DNA of 64,000 nucleotides from Anaeramoeba ignava BMAN (taxonomy: Eukaryota > Protista > Anaeramoebae). Below are positions 1 to 51,889 of this stretch, one piece after another (positions within the stretch are counted from its first letter, which is position 1; each line of letters opens with the position of its first letter). Position numbers and translations under genes: made by a program. The notes beneath the pieces are model-generated. The model was not told where the DNA came from, searched no databases, and was given only the letters and a program-made list of their open reading frames with translations. The stretch spans positions 1-64,000 of the forward strand of contig JAPDFW010000080.1 in the NCBI GenBank assembly GCA_028826165.1. The letters run 5' to 3'.

Positions 1-2240
1 TGATTTATATTTGTTTCCTCTATTAATATCTAATTCTGCGAAATGAGAAATTTGATAATTCCCCCTTGAATTTTCATTTTGGATTCTCTTCACAAATTAA
101 ATGCAATAGACTTTCATTCTTGATTGTTTTTGGCATTAATATCTAATCCTTTTCAACAAGAAATTTGATAATTTCATTGAATTTTCATTTAGATTTCTGC
201 AAATTAAATGCAAAAGCTGTTTCATTATTGTTTGTTTTCATTAGCATCTGCTCCGTTTGAAACAAGAAATTTGATAATTTCAACTGAGTTGAGATTTTGC
301 AAATAAAATGTAATGGAGTTTCATTATTTTCCGTTCTTTTTCATTAACATCAGCTCCATTTTCAACAAGAAACTTAATAATTTCCGCTGAATTTTGTTTC
401 GATTTTACAAGCAAAAATGCAAAGGAGTCATATCACGAGATGTTTTATCATTAATGTTTGCTCCATTTGCAAACAAGAAATTTTGATAATTTTCATATAA
501 ATTTGAGTTTTTACTTTGGCAAATAAAAATGTAATGCTGTTTCATTATAATTTGTTTTATCATTCACATTTGCTCCTTTTTGAAACAAGAAGTTTGATCG
601 ACTCAAATAATTTAGGATTTTCATTTTCATTTTCATTTTCATTTTCATTTTGGAATGGAAACTCTAATTGATTTTGATATTGGCAAACTTATATGTAATG
701 GTGTTTGCTTTTACATGTTTTGCATTAACATCTGCTCCATTTTCAACTCAAGAAATTTTTGATCATCTCGACTTTTGTATTTGAACTTTGACAAACAAAA
801 TGTAATGGTGTTTGGTTATTGTTATGAGATTATATTAACATCTGCTCCGTTTTCAACAAGTAATTTGATAATTTCATTTGAATTTGATTTTTCACTTTGC
901 ACAAACAAAATGTAACGGTGTTTGATTTTGATTTGTTTTTCATTAACATCTAATCCTTGTGAAACAAGAAATTTTGATAATTTCTATTGAATTTGGATTT
1001 GAATTTTGACAAGCAAAATGTAATGGTGTTTCATTATTATTTGTTTTGGCATTAATATTTGCTCCTTTTGAAATGAGAAATTTGATAATTTCATTTGAAT
1101 TTGGATTTGGACTTTGACAAGCAAAATGTAATGGTGTTTCATTGTTATATGTTTTAGCATTGACATCTAATCCTTTTGAAACAAGAAATTTGATAATTTC
1201 AATCGAATTTGGATTTGAACTTTGACAAGCAAAATGTAATGGTGTTTCATTATTATTTGTTTTGGCATTAATATCTAATCCTTTTGAAACGAGAAGCTTG
1301 ATAATTTCTATTGAATTTGGATTTGGACTTTGACAAGCAAAATGTAATGCTGTGCAATTTCTATTTGTTTTATAACTAGAATCTAATCCTTTTTCAATAA
1401 GAAATTTGATAGTTTCAATTGAATTTGGATTTGAACTTTGACAAGCAAAATGTAATGGTGTTTCATTATTATTCGTTTTGGCATTAATATCTGCTCCGTT
1501 TTCAATAAGAAATTTAATAATTTCAAATGATTTTGGATTTGGATTTTGGCAAATTAAATGCAATGGTGTTTCATTTTGATTTGTTTTGGCATTAACATCT
1601 AATCCTTTTGAAACAAGAAATTTGATAATTTCAAATAAATCTGGGTTTTGATTTCGACAAGCAAAATGTAATGGTGTTTCATTATTATTTGTTTTGATTT
1701 TGACATTTTCTCCATTTGAAACAAGAAATTTGATAATTTCAAATGAATTTGGGTTTGGACTTTGACAAGCAAAATGTAATGATGTTTCATCTTCATAAGT
1801 TTTGGCATTAATATCTGCTCCGTTTTCAATAAGAAATTTGATAATTTCAAATGATTTTGGATTTGGACTTTGACAAATTAAATGTAGAATTGTTTCATTA
1901 TTTTGCATTTTGACATTAATATCTGCTCCTTTAGAAACAAAGGAATTTGATAATTTCATCTGAATTTTCACTTTAATTTTCGATTTTGACAAAACAAAAT
2001 GTAATGGTGTTTCATTATGATAAGTTTTGGCATTAATATCTGCTCCATTTGAAACAAGAAATTTGATAATTTCAAATGATTCTGGATTTATATTTTGGCA
2101 AATTAAATGTAATGGTGTTTCATTAAAATTATTGGAAATATTAACATTGATTCCTTTTTGAAATGTGAAATTTAACTGATTCAAATGAATTATGTTGACA
2201 TGCACTTAATAAATCTTGAAATAAAAACTTTTTGATTCAT
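1..2240 (-). CDS. Ankyrin-repeat protein (36-aa repeats); runs off the left window edge, frameshifted at both ends
   Basis: ORF 943-2205 has about 11 repeats of NAKTxxNETPLHFACQSPNPNSIEIIKFLVSKGxDx (TPLH ankyrin motif). The same repeats continue in broken frames over 1-943. The likely true ATG is at 2240 (MNQKVF...), with a frameshift before the ORF. Confidence 0.85.
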
Positions 2241-16992: not shown

Positions 16993-19900
16993 ATGAAATT
17001 TGAATTTTCAATTTCATTAAAATATTTTTTAATTTTAATAATAATTTTAAAATTTATAAACTCTTCGCATACAATTAATTTTGATGATGAAATTTATACC
17101 CAATATTCACCTTTTGCAGCTTTTAGAATTTTAGATAAAACAAGTATTTTTGGAACAACTTCACCTTTTAAACCTTCTTCGGGTCAACTTTATCTTGTAG
17201 AAACTGAAGCAGATCTTACAAAACTTTTAAATGATAATCCAAGTCATACACTTGTTGTGGTTATTGATACCGCTGTTTATAACAAGTAAATTTATTTTAT
17301 ATTTATTTACAAATTTTATTTTACATTTATAAACAAAATCTATTTTACATTTGTAAACAAATTTATTTACAATTTATAATTAAAATATTAAAATAAATAT
17401 TAAAATAAATATTAAAATAAATATTGAAATAAATATTGAAATAAATATTAAAATAAAAATTAAAATAAATATTAAAATAAATATTAAATTAAATATTAAA
17501 ATAAATATTAAAATATTAAAATAAATATTAAATTAAAATTAAATTAAAAATTAAATATTAATATAAATATTAAAATAAATATTAAAAATAAATATTAAAA
17601 TAAATATTAAATTTAATATTAAAATAAATATTAAAATAAAATTAAAATAAATATTAAAATAAATATTAAAATAAAATAAATATTAAAATTAAATATTAAA
17701 ATAAATATTAAAATAAATATTAAAATAAATGAAATAAATATTAAAATAAATATTAAAATAAATATTAAAATAAATATTAAATAAATATTAAAAATAAATA
17801 TTAAAATAAATATTAAAAATAAATATTAAATTAAATATTAAAATAAATATTAAAATAAATATTAAATTAAATATTAAAATAAATATTAAAAATAAATATT
17901 AAAATAAAATATTAAAATCAAAATATTAAAATAAATATTATTAAAATAAATATTAAAATAAATATTAAAATAAATATTAAAATAAATATTAAAATAAATA
18001 TTAAAATAAATATTAAAATAAATATTAAAATAAATATTAAATAAAATAAATATTAAAATAAAATATTAAAAATTAAAAATATTAAAATAAATATTAAAAA
18101 ATAAATAAATATTAAAATAAATATTTAAAATTAAAATATTAAAATAAATATTAAAAATAAATATTAAAATAAATATTAAATTAAATATTAAAATAAATAA
18201 AAAAAATATTAAAATTAAATATTAAAATAAAATTAAATATAAAATAAAATATTAAAATAAATATTAAAATAAATATTTAAAATTAAATATTAAAATAAAA
18301 TTATAAATATTAAAAATATTAAAAAAAATTAAAATAAAAATATTAAAATTCAAAAAAATATTTAAAAAATATAAAAAATATTAAAATAAATTAAATATTA
18401 AAATAAATATTAAATTAAATATTAAATTAAATATTAAAAATAAATATTAAAATAAATATTAAAATAAATATTAAAATAAATATTAAAATAAATATTAAAT
18501 AAAAAATAAATATTAAAATAAATAAAAAATTAAAAATTAAAATTAAATATTAAAAAATAAATATAAAAAAATAAAAATTAAATTAAAAATTAAATATTAA
18601 AATAAATATTAAAAATAAATATTAAAATTAAATATTAAAATAAATATTAAAATATTAAAATAAATATTAAAATAAATAAAATTAAAAAAATATTAAAATT
18701 AAATAAATATTAAAATAAATATTAAAATAAATATTTAAATAAATATTAAAATATATAAAATAAATAAAATAAATATTAAAATATTGAAATAAATATTAAA
18801 ATAAATATTAAATTAAATATTAAATTAAATATTAAATTAAATATTAAACTAAATATTAAAATAAATATTAAAATAAATATTAAAATAAATATTAAAATAA
18901 ATATTAAAATAAATATTAAAATAAATATTCATAAAAATATTAAAATATTAAAATCAAAATAAATATTAAAATATTAAAGAGATAATCTCGAAAAATTGGT
19001 GGATAAATTAAAACTGGCAGGAATAATCGTAATCGGGGGAACAATACCAGCAACAGGATTTTCACCAGAGAAGGTGTATCCCGATCGAGAAGCAGACATG
19101 TGCCTTCACCCCAACAGCGACTACATTTGGAATCCATATGGAACATCACTTTTATACGAACGATTCTACATTCCAATAGTATATTTACTATTAGAAACAG
19201 AAAGCGAGAAAATGCGCGAACTGGCAAGAGCCAACGTAGAATCAGACAAGTATCCGAAGAACGGAGCTGATTTCCAGATGTTTATGGAAGCCTCAATTGA
19301 CTCGAAAGTGTGTCTTCGAAGAGAAACATGCGATCCAATTGGCGGTGAAAGCGTATGGGGTTTTCTTGGTGGGGTACAGAACCAGTCAAGACCGTACATA
19401 TTACTTCAAACATCATTAGATTCTCGCTCTTTTTTCCCAGGGTTCTCGCCAGGTGGTGACTTCCCTTCATCGGGAATAGTTACCCTCATAGCCGCCTTAG
19501 ACGCTCTCCTCAAATTCGCTGCAAATGACACTGACGCCTTTTACCAATCGCTCCAGCGAGATATAATGTTTGCGTTTTGGGAGAGCGAGAGTTTCGGAAA
19601 AGTGGGTTCCAGAAAGTTCATTTCTGACGTGCTGTCGTTTACTTGCGACCAATGGACAAATGAATGGAAAACTCAATGTGATGATCCAAAACGATCCTCA
19701 ATGGCGTTCAAGTCGGTAAACCTCAGCAATATCGCTTTCATCGTCGAACTCGGACAGACAGGTCTCTACGACAACATATCTAATTATGCCTTCAAATCAA
19801 ATGGCTATCTCCACTACGAGTACGACAACCCAGAAAATGTTCCACTTTCTGATTCTTTTATAAATTTAACGGATTTTTCCAATTCTCAAGGTCTCAACAT

Positions 19901-20690
19901 CTCCCATCTCGAGAAATCCGACCCAGCCACACCAGGTCTCCCTCCATCTTCTGCTGAGACTTTCATCTCCTTACTCGGCACACAAATCCCTGCCATCCTC
20001 ATCTCAGATTTCAACCAAAATTACACTAACAAATACTACTCAAGTATTTTTGATAACGTCCAAAATTTGGATCTCGACCAACTCCAAGGAATCGCAACAG
20101 CAACTGCGAGAATCGCCTATGCAGAAGCCACACAAACACTTCCTGAGAACGTTCCACTTGAAATTGTTGCAGATCAAGCGCTCATTTCACAACTGGTTGA
20201 CTGTTTTGTCGGAACAACTTATTGTGATCTTTTCCAAAATTTTTTGGGATCAATTTCAGGAACTTATTTCTCTTCAAATTATCCCGGTATTTATGCAACA
20301 GACACCATATCAATCCACTCCAAATTCATCCGCGATTTCATCACAAACTCAACAAACTCAACTTGCGATCCAAATTACTGCACAACCGACGAGGATTGCA
20401 ACTCGGCTCTCCAAGTTTGTGTCAACTACGCTTGCCATTCAATAACTGCTTACTTCCATCCTGCTTATTCTAACGGTGTTGAATACGATCCTGATAACGA
20501 TAAGTTCAATATCGTCGATTTTGGTCTCGACCATCTTTGGACTGAAAGTCGTTGGGAAGGAATCGAATTGAGAAGCTTCCAAATCAATAATCCTTCTATT
20601 AATGCTGCAATGCTTGTTGGTGGTATCTTATTGTTTCTTTTATATTATTTTTTGATTTGGATCCAAAAAAAGAAATCTTTTTTTTTCTAA
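16993..20690 (+). CDS. NCSTN: Nicastrin (gamma-secretase subunit); exons 16993-17285 and 18980-20690, about 667 aa
   Basis: Signal peptide; WNPYGTSLLYERF; CLRRETCDPIGGESVW; LDSRSFFPGFSPGGD; ESESFGKVGSRKF (DYIGS-equivalent); PGLPPSS; NKYYSSIFDN; WTESRW; C-terminal TM helix. The splice at 17286(GT)-18979(AG) restores the frame. Confidence 0.93.
17380..18975. repeat. 12-nt minisatellite (AAATATTAAAAT) filling the 1.7-kb nicastrin intron
   Basis: Visible tandem array. The same unit recurs in the CstF-64, F-box and last myosin introns. Confidence 0.95.
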
Positions 20691-21502: not shown

Positions 21503-24500
21503 TCAATTTTTTTGTAATTTTTCTAAAGCCCATTTTCCTTTTTCTTGAATTTTTTGATTATTTGGGAAATTATTCATTGCTTTTTTGATAGATTCAATTC
21601 CATTAAAATTTCTTATTTCAATTTGGTTTTCTATTTTAATATTTTTATTTTTGAAAATAAATTTGAAATTGATTAATTTTTTTTTTGATTTTAATTAATA
21701 ATTAATAATTATTTATTTATTATTTTGTAAATTTATTTAATTTTGATTTATTTTTTGTAATTATTTTTTGGTATTTTTTGATTTAATTTTTAATTTTGAA
21801 TTTCAATAAAAAAAATGGAAAATAAATAATTTTAATTTTTATTTTTTAATTTTTTATTTACCATTATTATTAACAGCAATATTCCATAAAGCTCTACATC
21901 CTTTTTTTTGAATATTTTGATTATTTGGGAAATTATTCATTGCTTTAATAATAGGTTCAATTCCTTTTAAATTTCTTATTTCAATTTTGTTTTCTATTTT
22001 AATATTTTTATTTTTGAAAATAAATTTGAAATTGATTAATTTTTTTTTTTGATTTTAATTAATAATTAATAATTATTTATTTATTATTTTGTAAATTTAT
22101 TTAATTTTGATTTATTTTTTGTAATTATTTTTGGTATTTTTTGATTTAATTTTTAATTTTGAATTTCAATAAAAAAAATGGAAAATAATTTTTTTTATTT
22201 TTTATTTACCATTATTAACAGCAATATTCCATAAAGCTCCACATCCTTTATATTGAATATCTTGATTATTTTGGAAATTATTCATTGCTTTAATAATAGG
22301 TTCAATTCCTTTTAAATTTCTTATTTCAATTTTGTTTTCTATTTTAATATTTTTATTTTTGAAAATAAATTTGAAATTGATTAATTTTTGATTTTAATTA
22401 ATAATTAATAATTATTTATTTATTATTTTGTAAATTTATTTAATTTTGATTTATTTTTTGTAATTATTTTTGGTATTTTTTGATTTAATTTTTAATTTTG
22501 AATTTCAATAAAAAAAATGGAAAATAAATAATTTTATTTATTTTTTATTTTTATTTACCATTATTAACAGCAATATTCCATAAAGCTCCACATCCTTTAT
22601 ATTGAATATCTTGATTATTTGGGAAATTATTCATTGCTTTAATAATAGGTTCAATTCCTTTTAAATTTCTTATTTCAATTTTGTTTTCTATTTTAATATT
22701 TTTATTTTTGAAAATAAATTTGAAATTGATTAATTTTTTTTTTGATTTTAATTAATAATTAATAATTATTTATTTATTATTTTGTAAATTTATTTAATTT
22801 TGATTTATTTTTTGTAATTATTTTTTGGTATTTTTTGATTTAATTTTTGATTTTAAATTTCAATAAAAAAATGGAAAATAAATATTTATTATTTATTTTT
22901 TATTTTTTATTTACCATTATTAACAGCAATATTCCATAAAGCTCTACATCCTTTATATTGAATATCTTGATTATTTTGGAAATTATTCATTGCTTTAATA
23001 ATAGGTTCAATTCCTTTTAATTTTCTTATTTCAATTTTGTTTTCTATTTTAATATTTTTATTTTTGAAAATAAATTTGAAATTGATTAATTTTTTTTTTG
23101 ATTTTAATTAATAATTAATATTTATTTATTTATTATTTTGTAAATTTATTTAATTTTGATTTATTTTTTGTAATTATTTTTTGGTATTTTTTGATTTAAT
23201 TTTTAATTTTGAATTTCAATAAAAAAAATGGAAAATAAATAATATTTTTTATTTTTAATTTTATTTACCATTATTATTAGCAATATCCCCTAAAGCTCCA
23301 CATCCATTTTCTTGAATATCTTGATTATTTTGGAAATTATTCATTGCTTTAATAATAGGTTCAATTCCTTTTAAATTTCTTATTTCAATTTTGTTTTCTA
23401 TTTTAATATTTTTATTTTTGAAAATAAATTTGAAATTGATTAATTTTTTTTTTGATTTTAATTAATAATTAATAATTATTTATTTATTATTTTGTAAATT
23501 TATTTAATTTTGATTTATTTTTTGTAATTATTTTTGGTATTTTTTGATTTAATTTTTAATTTTAAATTTCAATAAAAAAAATGGAAAATAAATAATATTT
23601 TTTATTTTTAATTTTATTTACCATTATCATTGAAAGAAATAACCCATAAAGCTCTACATCCTTTATATTGAATATCTTGATTATTTTGGAAATTATTCAT
23701 TGCTTTAATAATATGTTCAATTCCTTTTAAATTTCTTATTTCAATTCTGTTTTCTATTTTAATATTTTTATTTTTGAAAATAAATTTGAAATTGATTAAT
23801 TTTTTTTTTGATTTTAATTAATAATTAATAATTATTTATTTATTATTTTGTAAATTTATTTAATTTTGATTTATTTTTTGTAATTATTTTTTGGTATTTT
23901 TTGATTTAATTTTTGATTAATGATTAATAAATAAAAATAGATTATTTTTTATTTTTTTATTTTTTATTTACCATCATTAACAGCAATAATCCATAAAGCT
24001 CCACATCCTTGATATTGAATATCTTGATTATTTTGGAAATTATTCATTGATTTAATAATAGGTTCAATTCCTTTTAAATTTCTTATTTCAATTTTGTTTT
24101 CTATTTTAATATTTTTATTTTTGAAATAAATTTGAAATTGATTAATTTTTTTTTTTGATTTTAATTAATAATTAATAATTATTTATTTATTATTTTGTAA
24201 ATTTATTTAATTTTGATTTATTTTTTGTAATTATTTTTGTATTTTTTGATTTAATTTTTAATTTTTAATTTTTAATTTCAAAAAAAAAATGGAAAATAAA
24301 TAATTATTTTTTATTTTTTATTTTTTATTTACCATCATTAACAGCAATATTCCTAAAGCTCCACATCCTTGTTTCTTGAATATCTTGATTATTTTGGAAA
24401 TTATTCATTGCTTTAATAATAGGTTCAATTCCTTTTAAATTTCTTATTTCAATTTTGTTTTCTATTTTAATATTTTTATTTTTGAAAATAAATTTGAAAT

Positions 24501-27235
24501 TGATTAATTTTTTTTTTGATTTTAATTAATAATTAATAATTATTTATTTATTATTTTGTAAATTTATTTAATTTTGATTTATTTTTTGTAATTATTTTTG
24601 GTATTTTTTGATTTAATTTTTGATTAATGATTAATAAATAAAAATAGAAAATAATATTTTTTATTTTTTATTTACCTTTATCATTATAAGCAATACTCCA
24701 TAAAGCTCCACATCCTTGTTTTTGAATATCTTGATTATTTTGGAAATTATTCATTGCTTTAATAATAGGTTCAATTCCTTTTAAATTTCTTATTTCAATT
24801 TCGGTTTTCTATTTTAATATTTTTATTTTTGAAAATAAATTTGAAATTGATTAATTTTTTTTTTGATTTTAATTAATAATTAATAATTATTTATTTATTA
24901 TTTTGTAAATTTATTTAATTTTGATTTATTTTTTGTAATTATTTTTGGTATTTTTTGATTTAATTTTTAATTTTGAATTTCAATAAAAAAAATGGAAAAT
25001 AAATAATATTTAATTTTTAATTTTTATTTTTTATTTACCATCATTAACAGCAATATTCCATAAAGCTCCACATCCTTGTTTTTGAATATCTTGATTATTT
25101 GGGAAATTATTCATTGATTTAATAATAGGTTCAATTCCTTTTAAATTTCTTATTTCAATTCGGTTTTCTATTTTAATATTTTTATTTTTGAAAATAAATT
25201 TGAAATTGATTAATTTTTTTTTTTGATTTTAATTAATAATTAATAATTATTTATTTATTATTTTGTAAATTTATTTAATTTTGATTTATTTTTTGTAATT
25301 ATTTTTGGTATTTTTTGATTTAATTTTTGATTAATGATTAATAAATAAATAGATTAAAATAATTTTTTTTAATTTTATTTACCATTATTATTAGCAGCAA
25401 TAATCCATAAAGCTCCACATCCATATTTTTGAATATCTTGATTATTTTGGAAATTATTCATTGCTTTAATAACACATTTTATTCCTTTTAAATTTCTGAG
25501 TTTATTTCGATTATCTTTAAGTATTGAGTTTTAATATTGATTTTGAATTTTTTTTTAGAATTAAAAATTAAAGCAAAAAAAAAGTAATTTTAATTTAAAT
25601 TTTAATTTTGGAAAATAATAAAAAGATATAAAATTTTTACCTTCATTTTCTCTGGCAAATTTTTGTAAAATAAAACATCCATTTTCTTGAATTTTTTGAT
25701 TATTTGGGTATTGTTTCATATATTTTATTGTTTCTTCAATAGAATCTTTTTTTAATTTTGTTTTTAAATTTGAATTTAAATTTCAAAATAATTTTTTAAT
25801 AATTTAAAATTTAAAACAATTTACTTTCATTTAAATTTGAAATTTTATTTATAAAATCTTCTAAAGTTTTGTGAGCCTTTATTTCTGATTCAAAAATTTC
25901 TAATTGTGGTTTGATTTCTTTGATCTTATTTTTTTGTTTTTGAATTTTGTTTTCTTTTTGTTGAATGGTTTGTTTAAGTTGATTAATTTCTTGATCTTTT
26001 TGTTGAATAGTTTGTTTAAGTTGATTAATTTCTTTATCTTTTTGTTGAATAGTTTATTTTGTCTTGTCTTTTATTTTTTTTTTTAAGTTTTTTTTTCTTG
26101 ATTTAATTTCTTGATTTTTGATTAATTAATTGAAGTTGATCAGTTGAAGGTAAAATTGGATTATTTTGAGTTCTTGAATAATTTGAAATAAATCCTTCAT
26201 TTTTAATATTATCAATAATTAAATGAAAATCTTGAATTTCATTATTGATTTCTTGAATTTGAATTGGATCAATATATTTTTCTTTATTTATTAAATTTTT
26301 ATTGCTTTGTTTGAATTTATTTTTCCAATCTTGAGCTAATTTCCAAATTAAATTTATTCTGTTTTCTTTTGGTGTTGATTGAATAATTTGAATAATTTCT
26401 GTTAATTCTTTATTATTAATTGATCCAATTTGTTTTTCTTCAATAATTTTATTAATATTTTCTTTAATAAAATTTTCACAAATATTGGAAAGATAATTTG
26501 ATTCAATGGAAATACTTTTGAAATAAATTGGAATAACATTTTTATTAATTTGTTCTGAAACTTCTTTTCAATTTTGATTGTTAAAGTTTGTTAATTTAAA
26601 ATCTTTTGAAAGTTGAAAATATTTTTCAAATTTGTTTAAATCAAATTTAAATTCTGAATCATAAAGAAATGAAATGATTGATTTAACAATATCATACTCA
26701 AATTGTGGAAGATATAATTCTTCAATTTCTGATTTTTCATGATGATTTTCATAAAAAAATCTTGATCTTGAATTAAGAATTGATTTATGACAAGGAATTT
26801 TTTGATTATTTTTTCCAGCATAAATTATAAAATCACAATTTTCTTCATTTTGAAACATTTTTTTATAATTTGAAAGAAGTTCACAAATTAAAAATTTATT
26901 AAGTTCTTGAGGAGGAAATTGATATAATTTTGATATTTGGATTTTTTGTGATTTTTCTTTTGAATAAATTTCTTGAAATGAAATTTTTTGGATTTGGTTT
27001 TCATTTTGATTTGATTTTGATTTAGATTTCTTTTTTGATTTTGATTTCTTATTTGATTTTTGGTTTGATTTTTATTTGATTTTTGATTGGATTTTTGATT
27101 GGATTTCTTATTAGATTTTTGATTGGATTTCTTATTTGATTTTTGATTGGATTTCTTATTAGATTTCTTATTTGATTTCTTATTGGATTTTTGATTTGAA
27201 TGATTTGAATCAATTTTTTTTGAAGAATCACTCAT
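21503..27235 (-). CDS. BTB/POZ-BACK-coiled-coil protein with an exon-per-repeat armadillo array (N-cap + 11 internal ARM exons + C-cap)
   Basis: ATG at 27235 followed by an SNQK/SNKK low-complexity tract. BTB: CDFIIYAGKNNQKIPCHKSILNSRSRFF...IISFLY. BACK-like: LSNICENFIKENINKII...LIWKLAQDW. Coiled coil: TIQQKDKEINQLKQ repeated. N-cap exon at ~25641-25765. ARM exons at 25383-25514, 25039-25167, 24676-24808, 24333-24461, 23972-24100, 23622-23753, 23269-23397, 22915-23043, 22559-22687, 22210-22338 and 21862-21993. Terminal exon 21503-21630 (...QEKGKWALEKLQKN*). Several homopolymer frameshifts in the 5' part. Confidence 0.85.
21631..25514 (-). repeat. Tandem array of 11 exon+intron units, 343-363 bp each
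   Basis: Near-identical ~220-nt introns (GTAAATAAAA...AAAATATTAAAATAG) alternate with 129/132-nt exons encoding ENKIEIRNLKGIEPIIKAMNNFQNNQDIQxxGCxALxxIxxN. Confidence 0.95.
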
Positions 27236-27669: not shown

Positions 27670-29050
27670 AAATGGAATAAAGAATATTAAATAATTAAAT
27701 TTGGAATCAATTCTTTTTATATATTTTATCAACATTTATTTTATTAATTACCAAAAAAAAAATTACAAAATATTAAAATAAAATTTAAAAATGGAATAAA
27801 GAAAATTAAATAATTAAATGGAAAAATTTTATATATTTTAATTAATTTATTTTAAAAATAATTACCAAAAATTAAATAAAATTGATATTTAAAAATGGAA
27901 TAAAGAAATTAAATAATTAAATTTGGAATTAATTCTATTTTATATATTTTATCAATATTTATTTATTCAAAATAATATAAAATAATTACCAATAATTAAA
28001 TAAAATTGATAAAATATTTTAATTAATTTATTTAAAAAATGGAATAAAGAAAATTAAATAATTAAATTTGGAATCAATTCTATTTTATATATTTTATCAA
28101 CATTTATTTATTCAGAATAATATAAAATAATTACCAAAAATTAAATAAAATTGATAAAATATTTTAATAAATTATTTAAAAAATGGAATAAAGAATATTA
28201 AATAATTAAATTTGGAATCGAATTCTATTTTATATATTTTATCAATATTTATTTATTCAAAATAATATAAAATAATTACCAAAAATTAAATAAAATTGAT
28301 AAAATATTTTAATTAATTTATTTAAAAAATGGAATAAAAGAAAATTAAATAATTAAATTTGGAATCAATTCTATTTTTATATATTTTATCAACATTTATT
28401 TATTCAAAATAATATAAAAATAATTTCCAAAAATTAAATAAAATTGATAAAATATTTTAATTAATTTATTTAAAAATGGAATAAAGAAAATTAAATAATT
28501 AAATTTGGAATAAATTCTTTTTAAACATTTTATTAATATTTATTTATTCAAAAATAATATAAAATAATTACCAAAAATTAAATAAAAATTGATAAAATAT
28601 TTTAATTAATTTATTTAAAAATGGAATAAAGAAAATTAAATAATTAAATTTGGAATCAATTCTATTTTATATATTTTATCAATATTTATTTATTCAGAAT
28701 AATATAAAATAATTACCAAAAATTAAATAAAATTGATAAAATATTTTAATTAATTTATTTCAAAAATGGAATAAAGAAAATTAAATAATTAAATTTGGAA
28801 TTAATTCTATTTTTATATTTTATCAACATTTATTTATTCAAAATAATATAAAATAATTACCAAAAATTAAATAAAATTGATAAAAATATTTTAATTAATT
28901 TATTTAAAAATGAATAAAGAAAATTAAATAATTAAATTTGGAATCAATTCTATTTTTATATATTTTATTAATATTTCTTTATTCAGAATAATATAAAATA
29001 ATTACCAAAAATTAAATAAAATTAACAAAATATTTTAATAAATTTATTTC
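27670..29050. repeat. ~145-bp satellite: 8 full units plus 2 short degenerate units
   Basis: ATGGAATAAAG anchors at 27895, 28039, 28183, 28329, 28476, 28621, 28766 and 28910 (spacing 144-147). Confidence 0.93.
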
Positions 29051-30570: not shown

Positions 30571-33363
30571 ATGAACTTAATTATTTTCCTTTTCATAATA
30601 ATTAACATTTTCTTAATTCAAAGCTTGCCCCCATCATTCCAAGAATCATTTCAAGAATCATTTCAAGAATCATTTCAAGAATCATTTCAAGAATCATTTC
30701 AAGAATCATTTCAAGAATCATTTCAAGAATCATTTCAAGAATCATTTCAAGAAACATGCAGATATTATTCTTCTCTGAATGAGGCTTGGGTTTGGAGTTT
30801 ATTAGATCAATTTAGTGAACCAGTTTCATTTTTCGGATCGTCTGTTTCAATTTATAAAGATGTTCTTGTTATTGGAGCGCAAGGATCCTCAGAGGCATAT
30901 ATTTACAGATATAATGGAACACATTTTGATCTTGAACAAACATTGAATCAACCAACATCAAATTTTGGATATTCTGTTTCTGTTTCCGAAAATGTTCTTT
31001 TTGTTATAGCTGATACTAGTGGAACGCAAGGATATGTTTACAGATATAATGGGACATATTGGAATCTTGAGCAAACATTCGATCACTCTGTGCCGTATTT
31101 AATTGTTAGTGGTTCGATTTATAAAAATTTAATTCTTCTTACTCCTGATTGCCAACAGAATCAAGTTTTTGCTTACAGATATAATGGATCAACTTGGATT
31201 CTTGAACAAACTTTCACTGGAGCTCACAATTTTGGATATTCTCTTGGAATTTATGAAGATGTTATTGTTATTGGATCTTGGAGTGGAGATCAAGCATTTG
31301 TTTACAGATATAATGGATCAGTTTGGAATCAAGAACAGATTTTGGACGAATACCTTTCATATTTTGGGTATTCTGTTGCTATTTATGAAGATATCATTGT
31401 AGTAGGTACTTTGAATATGAAACAAGTATTTATTTACAGATATAATGGGACATATTGGAATCTTGAACAAAATTTCGATGAGTATTTAATTTCAAGTCTT
31501 GGATCTACTATTTCAGTTTATAAAGATATTATTGTTGCTGGAGCAAATAGTGCCAATCAGGCATTGATTTACAGATATAATGGAACAATTTGGAATGAAG
31601 AACAAAATTACAATGGAACGGGAAATTTTGGAAAGTCTGTTTCAAATTATGGGAATGTTGTTGTTATTGGAACTTCTGATGCAAATCAAGCATTTGCTTA
31701 TAAAAACGATTTCATTCCTCAAGCTAATATTATTAATTGTTCATCTTTGTTTTCATCATTTGATTGTTATTGGTATAAAAGTGAGTTTTTAGGAACTTTG
31801 AAATATCAAATCAATTATGGATATGATTGGATTGATATTGATTCTCCAATTCTTGAAGATGGGAATGTTTATTATCAATTATTTAATTCTTCAATTTATG
31901 ATAATATTACTGGGAATGAATATTATTCAATTCAAATTCAAGCTTGCGATAATTCAATAATGAAATGTGGTGAACCTTCTTCTTTTATTAATTTAACAAC
32001 AAAAATTGATTCTGTAAAAGATTTCCAATTATTCAATCCTTCAAATTATTCAATTAATGCTACTTGGAACTATCCTAATGTTCAAATCAATGAAGGAATT
32101 GCTCATCTTGATCATTACAATCTTTCTTATTTCATTCAATCAGAACCTGATTTAATATCTTTCATTTCAGTTGATAATTCTTCACTTGATTATCTTTTGA
32201 ATAATTTAGAATGTGGAAATGATTATAATGTTTCAATTTGTGGATGTAGAACACAAGAATGTGAAGGAGATGACAAAGGAGAACTTGTTGAATCATCAAT
32301 TTCATTAATATTTGGAGAAGTTACAGATTTTTCATGTTCAATTTCATATTCAATAGATATTAATTGTAATTGGAATCAACCAATTAATTGTTCAATTCCA
32401 TTTTATTATAATTTTACTTATCAATCAATTTCTCAAAATGATTCTGGAAATTATCAACCAACATCATCAAATCAACAATTTACAGCTCAATTTCCAAATC
32501 AAGAATATCAAATCAATGTATCAGCATGCGATTCAAATGGAAAATGTGGATATATTTCATCAATTTCAATTACAACTGATAATTTACCAATAGCTCCAAC
32601 AATTTATGAAACAATTTCCAAAATTGAAGAAATTGAATTTAATTTTACAAAATTAACAAATGCAAATAATTATTCAATTTCACTTGATAATGGAACAAAT
32701 TGGCAAAAATTCACATCTCTTGATTTAAGTGGAAATGAAATAATTGGAACAATAAATGGAATATCAGGAAATATTGAATATAATATTTCAATTCGAGGAT
32801 GTGTTGATTTAAATTGTGAAACACCATATTTAGGAGAACCAAGTTCAATCATTTCAAAAGGAGCTAAATTAGGAAATATTACTTCATTAAATTGTACATC
32901 CTTGATTAATGGATTTATTTGTACTTGGCATCCATTAATTTTATCAAGTGGATTAAAAGCTTATTCATTTACTTTCAATTCAATCTCAATTTGTTTGCCC
33001 AGTTTCACCAATTATTATTCAATTTCAGGATTACAAGGAGGAGAATATTATGAAATTTCAGTTTATTCATCAGCTAATTCAAATTGTTTAGATAATGAAT
33101 ATTCAGGAATTAATTCAATAACATCAGTTACAACATTATCTCCAAACGATCCATGTGAACCATGCGAGCCATGCCAACAAACTGATAATTCAAACAATTC
33201 CAACACAACAACAATAACTGTTGGAATATTTGTTCCAATTATTGCTATTTTAATAGTTATTATTGCAATTCTTTTATATCAGAAAAAAAAGAAAAAAACA
33301 AAATCCAAAAATCTAAATCAAAAACAAGAAGAAAAAGAACTTCAAGCTGATTTGGATCTTTAA
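30571..33363 (+). CDS. Type I membrane protein: FG-GAP-like beta-propeller + fibronectin type III domains, 930 aa, intronless
   Basis: Signal peptide; (SFQE)n tract; about 7 repeats of FGYSVxIYEDxIVVG...AFxYRYNGTxWNLEQ; FN3-like units (W..P...Y..., Y.VSVSAC); TM ITVGIFVPIIAILIVIIAILLY followed by KKKKK. Confidence 0.85.
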   Translation: MNLIIFLFIIINIFLIQSLPPSFQESFQESFQESFQESFQESFQESFQESFQESFQESFQETCRYYSSLNEAWVWSLLDQFSEPVSFFGSSVSIYKDVLVIGAQGSSEAYIYRYNGTHFDLEQTLNQPTSNFGYSVSVSENVLFVIADTSGTQGYVYRYNGTYWNLEQTFDHSVPYLIVSGSIYKNLILLTPDCQQNQVFAYRYNGSTWILEQTFTGAHNFGYSLGIYEDVIVIGSWSGDQAFVYRYNGSVWNQEQILDEYLSYFGYSVAIYEDIIVVGTLNMKQVFIYRYNGTYWNLEQNFDEYLISSLGSTISVYKDIIVAGANSANQALIYRYNGTIWNEEQNYNGTGNFGKSVSNYGNVVVIGTSDANQAFAYKNDFIPQANIINCSSLFSSFDCYWYKSEFLGTLKYQINYGYDWIDIDSPILEDGNVYYQLFNSSIYDNITGNEYYSIQIQACDNSIMKCGEPSSFINLTTKIDSVKDFQLFNPSNYSINATWNYPNVQINEGIAHLDHYNLSYFIQSEPDLISFISVDNSSLDYLLNNLECGNDYNVSICGCRTQECEGDDKGELVESSISLIFGEVTDFSCSISYSIDINCNWNQPINCSIPFYYNFTYQSISQNDSGNYQPTSSNQQFTAQFPNQEYQINVSACDSNGKCGYISSISITTDNLPIAPTIYETISKIEEIEFNFTKLTNANNYSISLDNGTNWQKFTSLDLSGNEIIGTINGISGNIEYNISIRGCVDLNCETPYLGEPSSIISKGAKLGNITSLNCTSLINGFICTWHPLILSSGLKAYSFTFNSISICLPSFTNYYSISGLQGGEYYEISVYSSANSNCLDNEYSGINSITSVTTLSPNDPCEPCEPCQQTDNSNNSNTTTITVGIFVPIIAILIVIIAILLYQKKKKKTKSKNLNQKQEEKELQADLDL

Positions 33364-36500: not shown

Positions 36501-39500
36501 TACTTTGAATCAAGGTAAATTAATAAATTAATAAATTAATAAATTAATAAATAAATAAATTAATAAATTAATAAATTAATAAATTAATAAATTAATAAAT
36601 TAATAAATTAATAAATTAATAAATTAATAAATTAATAAATTAATAAATTAATAAATTAATTAATTAATAAATTAATAAATTAATAAATTAATAAATAAAT
36701 AAAATTAATAAATAAATTAATAAATTAATAAATAAATAAATAAATAATAAATTAGTAAATTAATAAATTAATAAATTAATAAATTAATAAATTAATAAAT
36801 TAATAAATTAATAAATTAATAAATTAATTAATAAATTAATAAATTAATAAATTAATAAATTAATAAATTAGTAAATTAATAAATTAATAAATTAATTAAT
36901 AAATAAATAAATGATTATAATTTAATTGTTTTTTATCAATTTCAAATTTAGTTAGTGAAATTCCTATTTCAGATCAAAATAAAAGGGAAGATGAATTATT
37001 GAAGAGAATTTTATTTGAAAATTTACAAAGAGTATTTAAATACTCACCAAAAAATCCAAATATTCTTAGTATTTCTCATTTCTTTGGAGATGTATTGATT
37101 TAAATTTTAAATTGATTTAAATTTTAAATTGAATTTTTAAATTGAAATTTTATTCAAAAATAAATATCAAGATTTCTTATGATATGAATAATTTATGCAA
37201 TAATAATGAAAGTACAGCCAATGCATATTTGATATACGCACTTAAATCAAGTTCTTTCCCATTCATTGCAAATTTATTTCCAGAAGAAATTAATAATATT
37301 CAAGAAAAAGTATCACAAACTGTACTCACAAAATTTCAAAATCAAGTTCAAGAATTACAAACAAAAATCAATCAAGTTCATCGGAATTCACTTTTTTCAA
37401 TTTTCTGTTTAAGTACAAATATGTTTCAGAAATCAGATCGATTTGAATCAAAGCATGTTTCTAAACAAGTTAAATCAATGCTTTTGTGTGAATTAAGTAA
37501 AAAAAAGGATGATTTAAATTTAATTTAATTTTGATTTAATTTTGATTTAATTTAATTTGATTTTAATTTAATTTTGATTTAATTTAATTTTGATTTAATT
37601 TTAATTTAATTTAATTTTAATTTAATTTTAATTTAATTTTATTTTAATTTAATTTTGATTTGAATTTAATTTTGATTTAATTTAATTTTGATTTAATTTT
37701 GATTTAATTTTAATTTAATTTAATTTAATTTAATTTTGATTTAATTTAATTTTGATTTGATTTTAATTTAATTTTAATTTAATTTAATTTTGATTTTAAT
37801 TTTGATTTAAATTGATTTGAATTTAATTTTAATTTGATTTAATTTTGATTTTGATTTAAATTTAATTTAATTTGATTTAATTTGATTTAATTTTAATTTA
37901 ATTTTAATTTAATTTTGATTTTAATTTAATTTAATTTAATTTTGATTTAATTTTGATTTAAATTTAATTTGATTTTGATTTAATTTTGATTTAGTTTTAA
38001 TTTAATTTTGATTTTAATTTTGATTTTATTTTTATTTAATTTGATTTAATTTTGATTTAAATTGATTTGAATTTAATTTTGATTTAATTTTAATTTTGAT
38101 TTGAATTTGATTTAATTTAATTTGAATTTTGATTTAAAATTCTTACAAAAAAAGCAAAAGCAAAAAAATACGGATTCAATTACGAAGAAATTTTTAATAA
38201 TTTTGTTGATTATTTTGGAATATTAAGCAAAAAAACATGGCCAAGATATCAAGGAAATCAAAAACAAGGAGCCAAAACAATATTAGAATACATACGATTG
38301 AACGAAAAGGAATGGTATATTGGGCAAACAAAGATTTATATCAAAAAACCAGAAACTTTAATCAATTTAGAAAAAATGAGAATGATTAGATATTCTGAAT
38401 CAGCTCTTAGAATTCAAAGAGCGTATAGACGATATAAAATGAAAAATCAAACAATTCAGCTGCAAAACCAAGCAGCAAATCTTATGAACACAAAAAAGCA
38501 AAGAAGACATTTCTCAATCAATATGAAATTTATGGGGGATAATTTAAGTTATTTTCTCAACCAACCCATTCTTGAATTAATGGCCAAAAATGGTCATGAT
38601 AAGGAAAAATTATTATATTCAAACAAAGTGCATACACTTCGTTTCTCGAAATTTCGCCACAAACCAAAACGCCAAGATAGAGACTTGATTTTGACACAAC
38701 AGGGGTTGTATTTGATTGGGGTTTTTCGGATCAAAACCAAAAAACGCAAAATATTTGCTCTAAAATTTGATAAACACACACCCCTTTCAAATATTAAATC
38801 TGTGCATCTTTCAAAACTGGCAGATTCTTTTGTTTTGTTTAAATTGATTGATGATGATATTTTGATTGAGGATGATAAGAAAACAGAGTTAATTTCGATT
38901 CTTGTTCAATTCCAACGTTTACAAGAAAATGATTTACAAGTTGTTTTTAATAATGAAATGGAATTGAATCAAAAATCTAAGCGAATTCGCAATATTAGAT
39001 TTGAAACAAATTCAAGATCAAATGTGATATTGCCTCTATTGAAAGTGAAAAATAAAGTATTAATTGTATCAGTTGGCTCAGGTTTAGATGCTCAAAAAAT
39101 TGTTAATAATCCAAATATTCAAGAATTATCGTTAGAAAATCAATCTGAATCAAATGTTCAAAATTTTAACCAAGCAATGAGTATTAAAGAGATTAAAAAT
39201 TTAACAAATATAAATAAGAATGAAATTTTAAATGAAATTATGAATGAGAATATAAATGAGGATATAAATGAAGATATAGATGAAAATATAAATCAAAATC
39301 CTATTCAAAATCAAAATCAATCACAAAATTCAAATGAAATTATAATTGAAGATGTATTTGAAAATCCAAATCAACTTCAATTCCCACCTAAACCTCAAAT
39401 TCAAATTCCACCTAAACCTCAAATTCAAATTCCACCTAAACCTAAGATTCAAAATCAAAATCAAAATCAAAATCAAAATCAAAATCCTATTCAAAATCAA

Positions 39501-41354
39501 TTACAAAATTCAAATGAAATTATAATTGAAGATGTATTTGAAAATCCAAATCAATTTCAACTCCCACCTAAACCTCAAATTCAAATTCCACCTAAACCTC
39601 AAATTCAGATACCACCTAAACCTCAAATTCAAATTCCACCTAAACCTAAGATTCAAAATCAAAATCAAAATCAAAATCAAAATCAAAATCAAAATCAAAA
39701 TCAAAATCAAAATCAAAATCAAAATCAAAATCTATTCAAAATCAAAATCAATTACAAAATTCAAATGAAATTATAATTGAAGATGTATTTGAAAATCCAA
39801 ATCAATTTCAACTCCCACCTAAACCTAAAATTCAAATACCACCTAAACCTCAAATTCAAATTCCACCTAAACCTAAGATTCAAAATCAAAATCAAAATCC
39901 AAATGAAATTATAATTGAAGATGTATTCGAAAATCCTAATCAAAATCAAAATCAAAATCCAAATGAAATTATAATTGAAGATGTATTCGAAAATCCTAAT
40001 CAAAATCAAAATCAAAATCAAAATCAAAATCAAAATCAAAATCAAAACCAAAATCAAAATCAAAATGAAAATCAAAATATAAAATCAAAATAATGAAAAT
40101 CAAAAATCAAAACATAAATCAAAAATTCAAATGAAAATATAAATCAAAAATAAACAAAATCAAAATCAAAATATAATTGAAATGAAAATCAAAATAAAAA
40201 TCAAAACCAACTTCAAAATCAAAATAAAATCAAATTCAAATTCAAAAATTCAAAATGAAAAAATATAAATCAAATTATCAAACAAACAAAAATCAAAATA
40301 TTCAAAAAAATGAAAATGAAATAATCAAAAGATGTATTTGAAAATCCTAATCAAAATCAAAATCAAAATCAAATTCAAAATATAAATCAAAATCAAAATA
40401 TAAATCAAAATAAAAATCAAATTCAAAATGAAAATCAAAATCAAAATATAAATCAAAATCAAAATATAAATCAAAATAAAAATCAAAATATAAATCAAAA
40501 TGAAATTCAAAATCAAAATCAAAATATAAATCAAAATATAAATCAAAATATAAATCAAAATCAAAATCAAAATATAAATCAAAATCAAAATATCAATCAA
40601 AATCAAAATATAAATCAAAATAAAAATCAAAATATAAATCAAAATGAAATTCAAAATCAAAATCAAAACATAAATCAAAATATAAATCAAAATAAAATTT
40701 TATCAACAAATCCTCATACAAAATCTTCAAAGTCAATAAAACCTTCTAGAAGAAGAGCTCCAAAGCCTCCTATTCCAAAAAAACCAATTGCATGTAAATG
40801 AAATATTTATTTTAATATTTATTTTAATATTTATTTTAATATTTATTTTAATATTTATTTTAATATTTTATTTTAATATTTATTTCAATATTTATTTCAA
40901 TATTTATTTTAATATTTATTTCAATATTTATTTCAATATTTATTTCAATATTTATTTTAATATTTATTTTAATATTTATTTTTAATATTTAAATTAATAT
41001 TTAAATTAATATTTAAATTAATATTTATATTAATATTTAAATTAATATTTATATTAATATTTAAATTAATATTTATTTTAATATTTAATTTTAATATTTT
41101 AATTTTTTTTAGTTACAAAACCAGAAATTAAACCATCTTTACCAACAAATTTACAAACAAAAAATATGATTAGAATGATTGCAATGTGTGATTATGAAGG
41201 AAAATCACAAGAAGAATTGAGTTTTAAAAAATATGATATAATTAGAATTGAAAAGAAAACTGAAAATGAAATTTTATTTGGAGAATTAAAAGGAAAAAAA
41301 GGAAAATTTAATCAAAATTTAACTTTTGAAATTATTCCAATTGTTAACAAATAA
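33563..41354 (+). CDS. Long-tailed class I myosin-like protein (motor-IQ-TH1-Pro/QN-rich-SH3) with degenerate catalytic motifs
   Basis: YDLINLSKISENSITECLKKR; QTIILSGQTCSGKT; SFGNAATQENNNSTR; YFLETSRI...NERNFHI; ILDFPGYQE...INYFNEKI; KTWPRYQG...WYIGQTKIYIKKPETL; IQ motif ALRIQRAYRRY; TH1 (RDLILTQQGLYLI, LSKLADSF); PPKPQIQ repeats; SH3 AMCDYEGKSQEELSFKKYDII. Multi-exon, with frameshifts in the QN-rich tail (~39730-40330). Confidence 0.88.
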
Positions 41355-50260: not shown

Positions 50261-51889
50261 ATGGATTTTGATCAATTAAAATTTAATAAAATTTTACAAA
50301 AACAAACAACATTCGAAATAACAGAAAATCAAAAAAAAACAGCAGAAGAAAATGGTTTTAATTTACTTCCAAATGAACGTAAAAAGGATTATTAATATAA
50401 AATTGAAAATAAAATTTAAATTTAAATTTAAATTGAAAAATTTTCTGTTTTCTGTTTTTTTTTGATCATTTTAGTTCTTCTTGAAATTTTTCAATATTTG
50501 GGTATTAGAGAACTTTTAATGCTTTCTCTTGTTAATTCTCAACTTTCTTATGTTTCAGATGATTTAATTTTATGGAGAGATTTAATTCATCAAAATGTTG
50601 GAATTTTAGATTTTGATGAATTAAGTACTAATTCATCTGAAATTAAAATTGCAAAAAAAATTGGATTACAAGAAATTTTCGAACAAGAAAAAACAGATTC
50701 TTATGATTCTATTCCAACAAATAAATTAACACCAAAAAATCCAAAAAAAGAAGAAATTTATAATTTTCCAAAAAGGTTTTTTTTGGAACAAGTGAAAAAA
50801 GTGAAAAAAGCAGAAAAACAAATTCAACAGAATTTAAACCGTCAAAACAGAATTACAAAAATGGGCAAATTTATTGACAAATATATCAATTCATTTGTAA
50901 TTGGAGGATCAATTTTTTGCATGTTTTTATATCCTTCTTTAATGATTACTTTAAGAGCTGATGAAAGTTATAAATCAACTTGGATTGTTCCATTTCTATC
51001 ACTTATTTTATTATCAATAATATATGCAATTTGGACAATATTTGCAATTTGGACAATTGATCATAGAGAAAACAATGAAGATTATTATATGTTCTGGGCA
51101 ATTTTTTTTGCTTCTCTTATTACTTGTGCTTTTTTGTTTGTTTTAGCTCTTTATTTGGATGGAAAAATTACAATTTCTTTATCAAGAGTTTTAGTCATGT
51201 TTCATGTTGCGACAGGAATTTTTCAATTATTTTCAATTGTTGGATTTATTTCGATTGCCATTCGTAGATTTTTAACATTTAAAATATTAAATTAAATATT
51301 AAAATATTAAATTAAATTAAATATTAAATTAAATATTAAAATAAATATTAAAATAAATATTAAAATATTAAAATAAACATTAAAATAAATATTAAAATAA
51401 ATATTAAATTAAATATTAAAATATTAAATTAAATATTAAAATATTAAATTAAATATTAAAATATTAAAATAAAAAGGGAATCGATCTCGCCTTTTAGAAT
51501 ATATTCTCTTAATGGAAATTTTTGCTTTGGGATTAATTGTTTTAGATATTAGTGCAAGTTTAACAGAGAAAAAAATTAATGGAGCAGATTTTTCTTGGTC
51601 ATTAGTTTTACTTCCAGAATTTTGTTATAATTTTCTAATTTTGGTTGGATTAATTGTATTTGCATTATATCAAAAAATTCATGAGGGAAGTTATTCAACA
51701 ATGCTAGCAATTTTACCTTTTATTCTTATTCTAATTCTTTTTACTTTATCAGAAATTTTTATTGCTTTAAAACTTGATAATAATTTTAATAAGTCTTGGA
51801 TTGTTATTTCATTACCTATTTTAATCCCATCCTTTTTATTATCAATTATCACAGGAAAATTAGGTTGGAGTAATTATAAACAAAATTAA
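50261..51889 (+). CDS. F-box + multi-pass TMEM185/TMEM60-like membrane protein; 3 exons
   Basis: F-box spans intron 1: FNLLPNE|LLLEIFQYLGIRELLMLSLVNSQL...DLILWRDL. About 8 TM helices with repeated ITLRADE..STWIVPF, LALYLDGKITIS and IALKLDNNFNKSWIVISLPI motifs. Confidence 0.78.

What the first reader, a model, noticed from the sequence alone, without database searches (positions are those of the whole stretch)
21503..27235. BTB-BACK-CC-ARM gene whose exon-per-repeat ARM array is hypervariable on the ligand-binding helix: candidate modular immune-like recognition/ubiquitination system
Seen: 11 tandem exon+intron units with nearly identical introns. Exon differences are almost all non-synonymous and cluster in one segment. 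After the (D/N)IQ anchor the repeats read, 5' to 3': KY-GCG-AL-WI-IAANNN, KQ-GCG-AL-WN-IAVND, KQ-GCG-AL-WS-IAYNDK, EQ-GCG-AL-GN-IAVND (indel-corrected, uncertain), YQ-GCG-AL-WI-IAVND, YK-GCR-AL-WV-ISFNDN, EN-GCG-AL-GD-IANNN, YK-GCR-AL-WN-IAVNN, YK-GCG-AL-WN-IAVNN (twice), KK-GCR-AL-WN-IAVNNN. Scaffold residues (GC, AL, I) are fixed, and distinct N-cap and C-cap exons flank the array. Established: IQxxGCxALxNIA aligns to armadillo helix 3, whose exposed positions line the peptide-binding groove (the positions randomised in designed ARM binders), and BTB-BACK proteins are Cullin-3 substrate adaptors. Inference: a diversifying intracellular receptor that targets variable foreign proteins (virus or symbiont) for ubiquitination. 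This parallels the exon-per-repeat LRR/TPR shuffling reported in Ectocarpus, but with an ARM/BTB architecture.
Basis: partly seen in the sequence, partly recalled or inferred. Interest (0 to 1): 0.92.

Follow-up and report, generated by a model that had tools for sequence, protein, structure and literature searches.

The report
Hypervariable one-exon armadillo ubiquitin-adaptor gene
A gene of the anaerobic amoeba Anaeramoeba ignava joins a conserved ubiquitin-ligase adaptor domain to eleven interchangeable one-exon armadillo repeats that differ mostly on their binding face; it belongs to a large, apparently undescribed family that may let the cell evolve new protein-recognition specificities quickly, but no target or within-cell variation has been shown.

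Summary
On the minus strand, a BTB-BACK-like/coiled-coil exon, an N-cap exon, 11 phase-1 exons of 129/132 nt (one ARM repeat each) and a C-cap exon form one gene of Anaeramoeba ignava. It belongs to a family with at least 507 repeat exons and at least 38 loci. Variation concentrates on one face of ARM helix 3: 133 different 7-residue groove strings in 154 repeats, omega about 3-5 there, against pN/pS 0.35 in the BTB head. A 94%-identical ARM module also sits on RING-kinase-SH3 heads. Best reading: ubiquitin-ligase substrate receptors diversified by unequal crossing-over, gene conversion and selection. An immune or symbiont target and Cul3 binding are inferred, not shown. Recombination and AT bias inflate omega; the recombination-free estimate is only 1.4-1.6. 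This copy has several frame-breaking indels (Nanopore error or decay). It works like Ectocarpus and Tetrahymena exon-per-repeat arrays and nematode MATH-BTB adaptors, but I found no paper on an ARM version. The scan already found this family several times on other DNA of this genome.

The parts
25825..27235 (-). Exon 1 (1411 nt): low-complexity N-terminus, BTB, BACK-like region, coiled coil; broken by several indels as assembled
   Evidence: ATG at 27235 and donor after 25825; 96-98% identical over aligned columns to exon 1 of paralogs L012, L014 (open frames) and L016
26583..26864 (-). BTB/POZ domain
   Evidence: PF00651 E=6e-14; 0-4 non-synonymous differences from three sister loci over 122 codons, pooled pN/pS 0.35 in six loci
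26388..26510 (-). BACK-like region
   Evidence: PF07707 E=0.012, under cut-off; relative P0001 aligns through BTB and BACK to KBTBD2, A55 and KLHL11
25830..26053 (-). Coiled coil with a 42-bp repeat
   Evidence: Weak coiled-coil Pfam hits; TRF period 42
25641..25745 (-). N-cap ARM exon, 105 nt, phase 1-1
   Evidence: motif found at 38 places in the genome, 0 in control
25383..25514 (-). Repeat exon R1 (132 nt, divergent helix 1)
   Evidence: same exon used in annotated paralogs P0003 and P0154
25039..25167 (-). Repeat exon R2 (129 nt)
24676..24808 (-). Repeat exon R3 (133 nt as assembled; one extra A, out of frame)
24333..24461 (-). Repeat exon R4 (129 nt; compensating +1/-1 in homopolymers garbles helix 3)
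21862..24100 (-). Repeat exons R5-R11: 24100-23972, 23753-23622, 23397-23269, 23043-22915, 22687-22559, 22338-22210, 21993-21862, with 216-227-nt introns
   Evidence: Pfam Arm E=0.003 and ARM_LRRK2 E=0.004 for one exon
21503..21630 (-). C-cap exon ending in TGA
   Evidence: similar terminal exon in most paralogs

Best explanation
A member of a young, expanding A. ignava family of intracellular recognition proteins built from a constant effector head and a variable ARM solenoid. Shown in sequence: each repeat is one symmetric phase-1 exon, so exon-plus-intron units can be gained, lost or overwritten without breaking the frame; the scaffold and the 3' intron are homogenised while the exposed face of helix 3 diversifies. 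Inferred: unequal crossing-over and gene conversion in the inherited genome reshuffle the units, selection favours new groove residues, the BTB-BACK head docks on Cullin-3, and bound proteins are ubiquitinated. Least certain: the targets are variable foreign proteins (symbiont or pathogen effectors, viruses, engulfed prey).
For: Structure of paralog P0002: three helices per 43 residues, pLDDT above 90 in the repeats, Foldseek hits to beta-catenin, Vac8 and designed ARM proteins; P0003 repeats match Vac8 at E=6e-23. On a helical wheel the variable positions 29, 30, 33, 36, 37, 40 lie in a 120-degree arc and the conserved ones on the opposite side. Entropy over 170 exons peaks at 29, 30, 33, 36, 40 (2.2-2.9 bits; core mostly under 0.5). 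ML omega for the groove 3.0-6.4 under three codon models, 2dL 16-47 against omega=1 with its own dS. Recombination-free allele count: 63 N/9 S in the groove against 65/29 elsewhere, Fisher P=0.005. BTB pN/pS 0.35. 133 groove strings in 154 units; helix-3 Fst-like 0.18 against 0.41-0.57 for introns and scaffold; weak linkage between variable sites. Detected in-frame repeat exons range from 3 to 23 per fetched locus. The same module is fused to RING-kinase-SH3 (94% identical from 25953 to 25395). NCBI models of two paralogs join 10 of 11 predicted exons as predicted. Eight cullin C-termini in the genome. Precedent for adaptors with selected substrate domains: PMC4334554.
Against: Recombination inflates tree-based omega: the scaffold also reads 0.5-1.6, and two-state scaffold sites 2, 17 and 26 score 3-6. 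The recombination-free ratio is only 1.4-1.6, though saturation lowers it. No RNA run holds this locus. This copy has frame-breaking lesions. No binding, Cul3 or target data. The same ARM subtype varies at the same positions in intronless genes of other eukaryotes, so some variability is generic to the fold. The splice support from NCBI models is annotation, not reads.
Confidence: 0.58

Rival explanations
1. Relaxed tandem turnover. The exon-intron unit copies itself like a minisatellite, and the groove is simply the part of the fold that tolerates change; there is no selection for new specificities.
For: The genome is full of tandem repeats. Scaffold pN/pS within loci is near 1 by simple counting (0.061/0.066). 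Many copies carry lesions. Recombination-free ratio is modest.
Against: Groove pN (0.345) is five times scaffold pS (0.066) within loci. Other exposed positions on helices 1-2 stay nearly fixed. Multi-base codon changes give up to 14 residues at a site. BTB is under purifying selection.
Confidence: 0.17
2. Diversified adaptors for the cell's own proteins, for example quality control or membrane traffic of the symbiosome, rather than for foreign proteins.
For: Other ARM fusions in the species carry RCC1, kinase and SH3 domains typical of signalling. Anaeramoeba has expanded trafficking regulators (PMC11550330).
Against: Self targets rarely drive continuing diversification with near-unique groove strings per repeat (general knowledge).
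Confidence: 0.15
3. A within-cell diversifying system: exon skipping or programmed recombination among the symmetric exons makes many receptors from each gene.
For: All exons are phase 1-1 with near-identical splice sites, so any skip stays in frame. Alternative splicing of such exons is reported in brown algal ROCO genes (PMC11378527).
Against: No transcript or read evidence. No recombinase gene among the nine further window ORFs scanned. I saw no exon library on the opposite strand in the 20 loci read. Duplicated blocks of neighbouring units fit ordinary unequal crossing-over (L029).
Confidence: 0.1

Closest known systems
Ectocarpus ROCO-LRR and NB-ARC-TPR genes (PMC3341825; PMC11378527)
   Same: One repeat per exon, exon shuffling, positive selection on the ligand-binding face, gene birth and death, proposed immune role.
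   Different: ARM rather than LRR or TPR; heads are BTB-BACK or RING-kinase-SH3 rather than ROC-COR or NB-ARC; introns are homogenised too; no reverse-strand intronic exons seen in 20 loci.
[quoted passage not shown]
   Same: Tandem fixed-length exons with one intron phase, variable repeat number, recombination within and between genes.
   Different: 129/132-nt phase-1 ARM exons; no germline/soma split known; no retrotransposon link tested; diversity focused on one helix face.
Nematode F-box and MATH-BTB adaptors (as cited in PMC4334554)
   Same: Cullin-binding part conserved, substrate-binding part under positive selection, fast birth and death, proposed to degrade foreign proteins.
   Different: The substrate domain here is a modular repeat array that changes by exon units, not a single MATH or FTH domain.
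BTB-BACK-Kelch Cul3 adaptors (KBTBD2, KLHL11, vaccinia A55)
   Same: Best solved relatives of the head; alignment runs through BTB into BACK.
   Different: Coiled coil and ARM array replace Kelch; similarity is weak (E about 6e-5).
LRRK2/ZER1-like ARM subtype in other protists (S. rosetta PTSG_10776; U-box-kinase-ARM proteins); NCBI label 'aardvark'
   Same: Same 43-residue repeat with the GCxAL motif, variable at the same helix-3 positions.
   Different: PTSG_10776 is intronless and its repeats are more diverged. 'Aardvark' is an automatic best-hit name; orthology to Dictyostelium Aardvark was not tested.

Membership tests
Armadillo repeat proteins | Tandem repeats of about 42 residues with three helices, forming an ARM solenoid | tested here: met
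   AlphaFold model of paralog P0002 and Foldseek; Pfam Arm and ARM_LRRK2 above cut-off for whole paralog proteins; single window exon under cut-off
Armadillo repeat proteins | Asn ladder on helix 3 for extended-peptide binding | tested here: inconclusive
   Asn in 132 of 170 exons at position 37, replaced by S, I, D, V, A or F in the rest; role of the ladder from PMC6838082
BTB-BACK Cullin-3 adaptors | BTB domain | tested here: met
   PF00651 52.5 bits, cut-off 20.5
BTB-BACK Cullin-3 adaptors | 3-box/BACK after the BTB | tested here: inconclusive
   PF07707 E=0.012, under cut-off; alignment of a relative to KBTBD2 continues into BACK
BTB-BACK Cullin-3 adaptors | Binds Cul3 and promotes substrate ubiquitination | not testable with these tools
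   Only the presence of 8 cullin C-termini was shown; they were not typed
Exon-per-repeat shuffled solenoid arrays (Ectocarpus, Tetrahymena type) | One repeat per fixed-length exon, single intron phase | tested here: met
Exon-per-repeat shuffled solenoid arrays (Ectocarpus, Tetrahymena type) | Variable repeat number and mosaic repeats among paralogs | tested here: met
   3-23 in-frame repeat exons per locus; low linkage; about half of nearest neighbours in another locus
Exon-per-repeat shuffled solenoid arrays (Ectocarpus, Tetrahymena type) | Positive selection on the binding face | tested here: met
   the size of omega is uncertain because of recombination
Exon-per-repeat shuffled solenoid arrays (Ectocarpus, Tetrahymena type) | LRR or TPR repeat with ROC-COR or NB-ARC | tested here: not met
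   ARM with BTB or RING-kinase heads; so it works like these families but is not a member
Somatically diversified receptors (VLR, DSCAM type) | Variation generated within a cell or clone | not tested

The most novel reading that the evidence does not exclude
The arrays form an antibody-like intracellular repertoire: each cell or clone produces many ARM binders by exon skipping or directed conversion, and routes bound symbiont, bacterial or viral proteins to ubiquitination through swappable BTB or RING heads.
Probability: 0.1. Interest if true: 0.92.

Novelty: new variant of a known kind. Interest (0 to 1): 0.64.

Why it matters
It extends exon-per-repeat receptor diversification from LRR and TPR to armadillo repeats, in a metamonad amoeba that lives with intracellular-like symbionts, and couples it to ubiquitin-ligase heads. 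That makes protist innate immunity and symbiont control testable with a defined gene family. It is also a natural counterpart of designed ARM binder libraries: one constant scaffold with more than 130 natural groove variants.

Tried and rejected
Later searches used database proteins and other loci, which are similar paralogs. The joined spliced model was not searched or folded; exons were searched apart and a database paralog was folded. IQ-TREE codon partitions crashed; I wrote a fixed-tree codon model with few optimisation steps, so its values are approximate. Thomas 2006 was not held and is cited second-hand. The residue numbers randomised in designed ARM libraries could not be confirmed from a paper; only the role of helix 3 and the Asn ladder were.
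Full report
Observation. The gene lies on the minus strand from ATG 27235 to TGA 21503. Exon 1 (27235-25825) encodes a low-complexity N-terminus, a BTB domain (PF00651, E=6e-14), a weak BACK match (E=0.012) and a coiled coil. It is followed by a 105-nt N-cap exon, eleven repeat exons of 129 or 132 nt and a C-cap exon. All repeat exons start and end in phase 1, with GT..AG introns of 214-232 nt. TRF reports 11.2 copies of 356 bp at 92%. Among the eight clean exons of the main type, 14 codons vary and each changes the residue; 11 of 20 segregating bases fall in seven helix-3 codons. The 3' 150 columns of the introns differ by 0.001, the 5' part by about 0.15, with two haplotypes.

State of this copy. 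As assembled it is not an open gene. Exon 1 has indels near 27071, 26589/26568 and 26119-26055, R3 has an extra A, and R4 has a compensating pair. Most lie in A or G runs. Sister loci L012 and L014 have an open exon 1. The published assembly was built from Nanopore reads with Pilon polishing (PMC11550330), and short reads map poorly in such repeats (my inference). The joined spliced model was left out of all searches.

Organism and family. Protein hits are Anaeramoeba ignava, and the lengths of contigs C68, C110 and C60 match those of NCBI records. A strict helix-3 pattern has 507 matches in the 42.8-Mb genome and none in the control. The N-cap motif occurs 38 times. Both are lower bounds. In 20 fetched loci plus the window I found 172 in-frame repeat exons, 3 to 23 per locus. 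NCBI models KAJ5075045.1 (P0003, locus L013) and M0811_11943 (P0154, locus L011) join 10 of 11 of my predicted exons unchanged; this is annotation, not read evidence. A more diverged BTB-ARM protein comes from an A. ignava transcriptome (P0041). No RNA run was listed for this locus.

Fold and position of the variable sites. AlphaFold of the paralog P0002 array gives three helices per 43 residues, with helix 3 covering positions 26-39. Foldseek returns engineered ARM-type proteins, beta-catenin, Vac8 and designed ARM proteins. P0003 repeats match Vac8 at E=6e-23 and LRRK2 at 1e-10. Over 170 exons, entropy is 2.2-2.9 bits at positions 29, 30, 33, 36 and 40, and 1.3-1.7 at 26, 37, 39, 41 and 42; position 2 is also variable (1.8); core positions are mostly under 0.5. 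Positions 29, 30, 33, 36, 37 and 40 share a 120-degree arc of the helix and the conserved ones face the other way. Helix 3 forms the peptide pockets in designed ARM proteins (PMC11228518), and a conserved Asn ladder holds the backbone (PMC6838082). That designed libraries randomise these same residue numbers is from my memory and unverified. Position 37, the ladder Asn, is replaced in about a fifth of repeats.

Selection. Within loci, groove pN is 0.345 and pS 0.174; elsewhere pN is 0.061 and pS 0.066. A fixed-tree codon model gives groove omega 3.5-6.4 with shared dS and 3.0-5.1 with its own dS (2dL 16-47 against 1); the scaffold reads 0.5-1.6. Recombination and GC3 near 0.1 inflate these values. 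A count of distinct alleles, which recombination between codons cannot inflate, gives 63 non-synonymous to 9 synonymous steps in the groove and 65 to 29 elsewhere (Fisher P=0.005; ratio 1.4-1.6 against 0.5-0.6). The BTB head of six close paralogs has pN/pS 0.35, and the window's BTB is identical in protein to that of L016. The contrast is firm; the exact omega is not.

Reshuffling. There are 133 distinct seven-residue groove strings in 154 units. Helix 3 is far less locus-specific (Fst-like 0.18) than the upstream intron (0.57), scaffold (0.44) or downstream intron (0.41), and linkage between variable sites is weak except for adjacent ones. One 45-nt helix-3 haplotype is identical between the window and C33 although the flanking introns differ by 22-32%. 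This fits conversion and unequal crossing-over, or repeated selection of the same codons.

Head swapping. Locus L011 is 94% identical to the window from 25953 to 25395 (end of coiled coil, two introns, N-cap, R1) but carries a RING-kinase-SH3 head; L013 is similar. Other A. ignava proteins are ARM-RCC1-BTB. The ARM module therefore moved recently between heads, and both BTB and RING are ubiquitin-ligase parts by established knowledge. The best solved relatives of the BTB head are KBTBD2, A55 and KLHL11, and the genome has eight cullin C-termini.

Mechanism. Shown: architecture, family size, focused amino-acid diversity, conserved head, mosaic repeats, head swap. Inferred: recombination in the inherited genome plus selection, Cul3 recruitment, ubiquitination of bound proteins. 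Speculative: foreign targets, and variation within a cell.

Comparison. [quoted passage not shown] The ARM subtype is widespread (3871 hits at E up to 0.001); the one outside relative I checked, S. rosetta PTSG_10776, is intronless. The main text of the A. ignava genome paper does not mention armadillo, BTB or ubiquitin (supplements not read), and my searches found no paper on such a family. Many subscription papers are not covered.

Verdict. Real, and a new variant of a known kind. The scan has already reported the family from other loci of this genome. This locus adds a young subfamily with near-identical BTB heads, different grooves and a recent swap to a RING-kinase head. Interest 0.64.

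Noticed in passing
L011:2186-6730 (G000:C110) and L013:177-4750 (G000:C68): RING-kinase-SH3 genes carry nearly the same ARM module as the window gene (94% and 93% identical), a recent head swap; on C68 one lies just downstream of a BTB-ARM gene.
   Followed up: yes
window 27886-29049: Eight copies of a 145-bp AT-rich unit (94% identical) about 650 bp upstream of the start codon; purpose unknown.
   Followed up: no
window 693-2205 (-): Intronless ankyrin array, 13 copies of 108 bp at about 80% identity, apparently frameshifted at its 3' end.
   Followed up: partly
window 18996-20690 (+): Nicastrin coding stretch with 44% GC and GC3 0.40 in a window of about 17% GC; codon composition differs strongly from the ARM gene (GC3 0.06-0.10).
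   Followed up: partly
window 30571-33363 (+): 930-aa ORF with FG-GAP repeats, a fibronectin III domain and a probable C-terminal membrane helix: a surface protein.
   Followed up: partly
window 38298-39776 (+), 50462-51295 (+), 59900-61351 (-): Myosin I tail (TH1), an F-box-like protein and a DIL-domain protein.
   Followed up: partly
L015:5370-5500 and L016:6910-7040: A second, decayed C-cap-like copy lies downstream of the terminal exon in two sister loci.
   Followed up: no
L020 (G000:C61:558000-567000): Long ARM array in which many exons are out of frame, either a poorly polished stretch or a decaying gene.
   Followed up: no
P0012, P0007, P0155, P0156: Other eukaryotes have the same ARM subtype with helix-3 variation, fused to ADP-ribosyltransferase, DUF4062 or U-box-kinase domains; P0012 has near-identical repeats, gene structure unknown.
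   Followed up: partly
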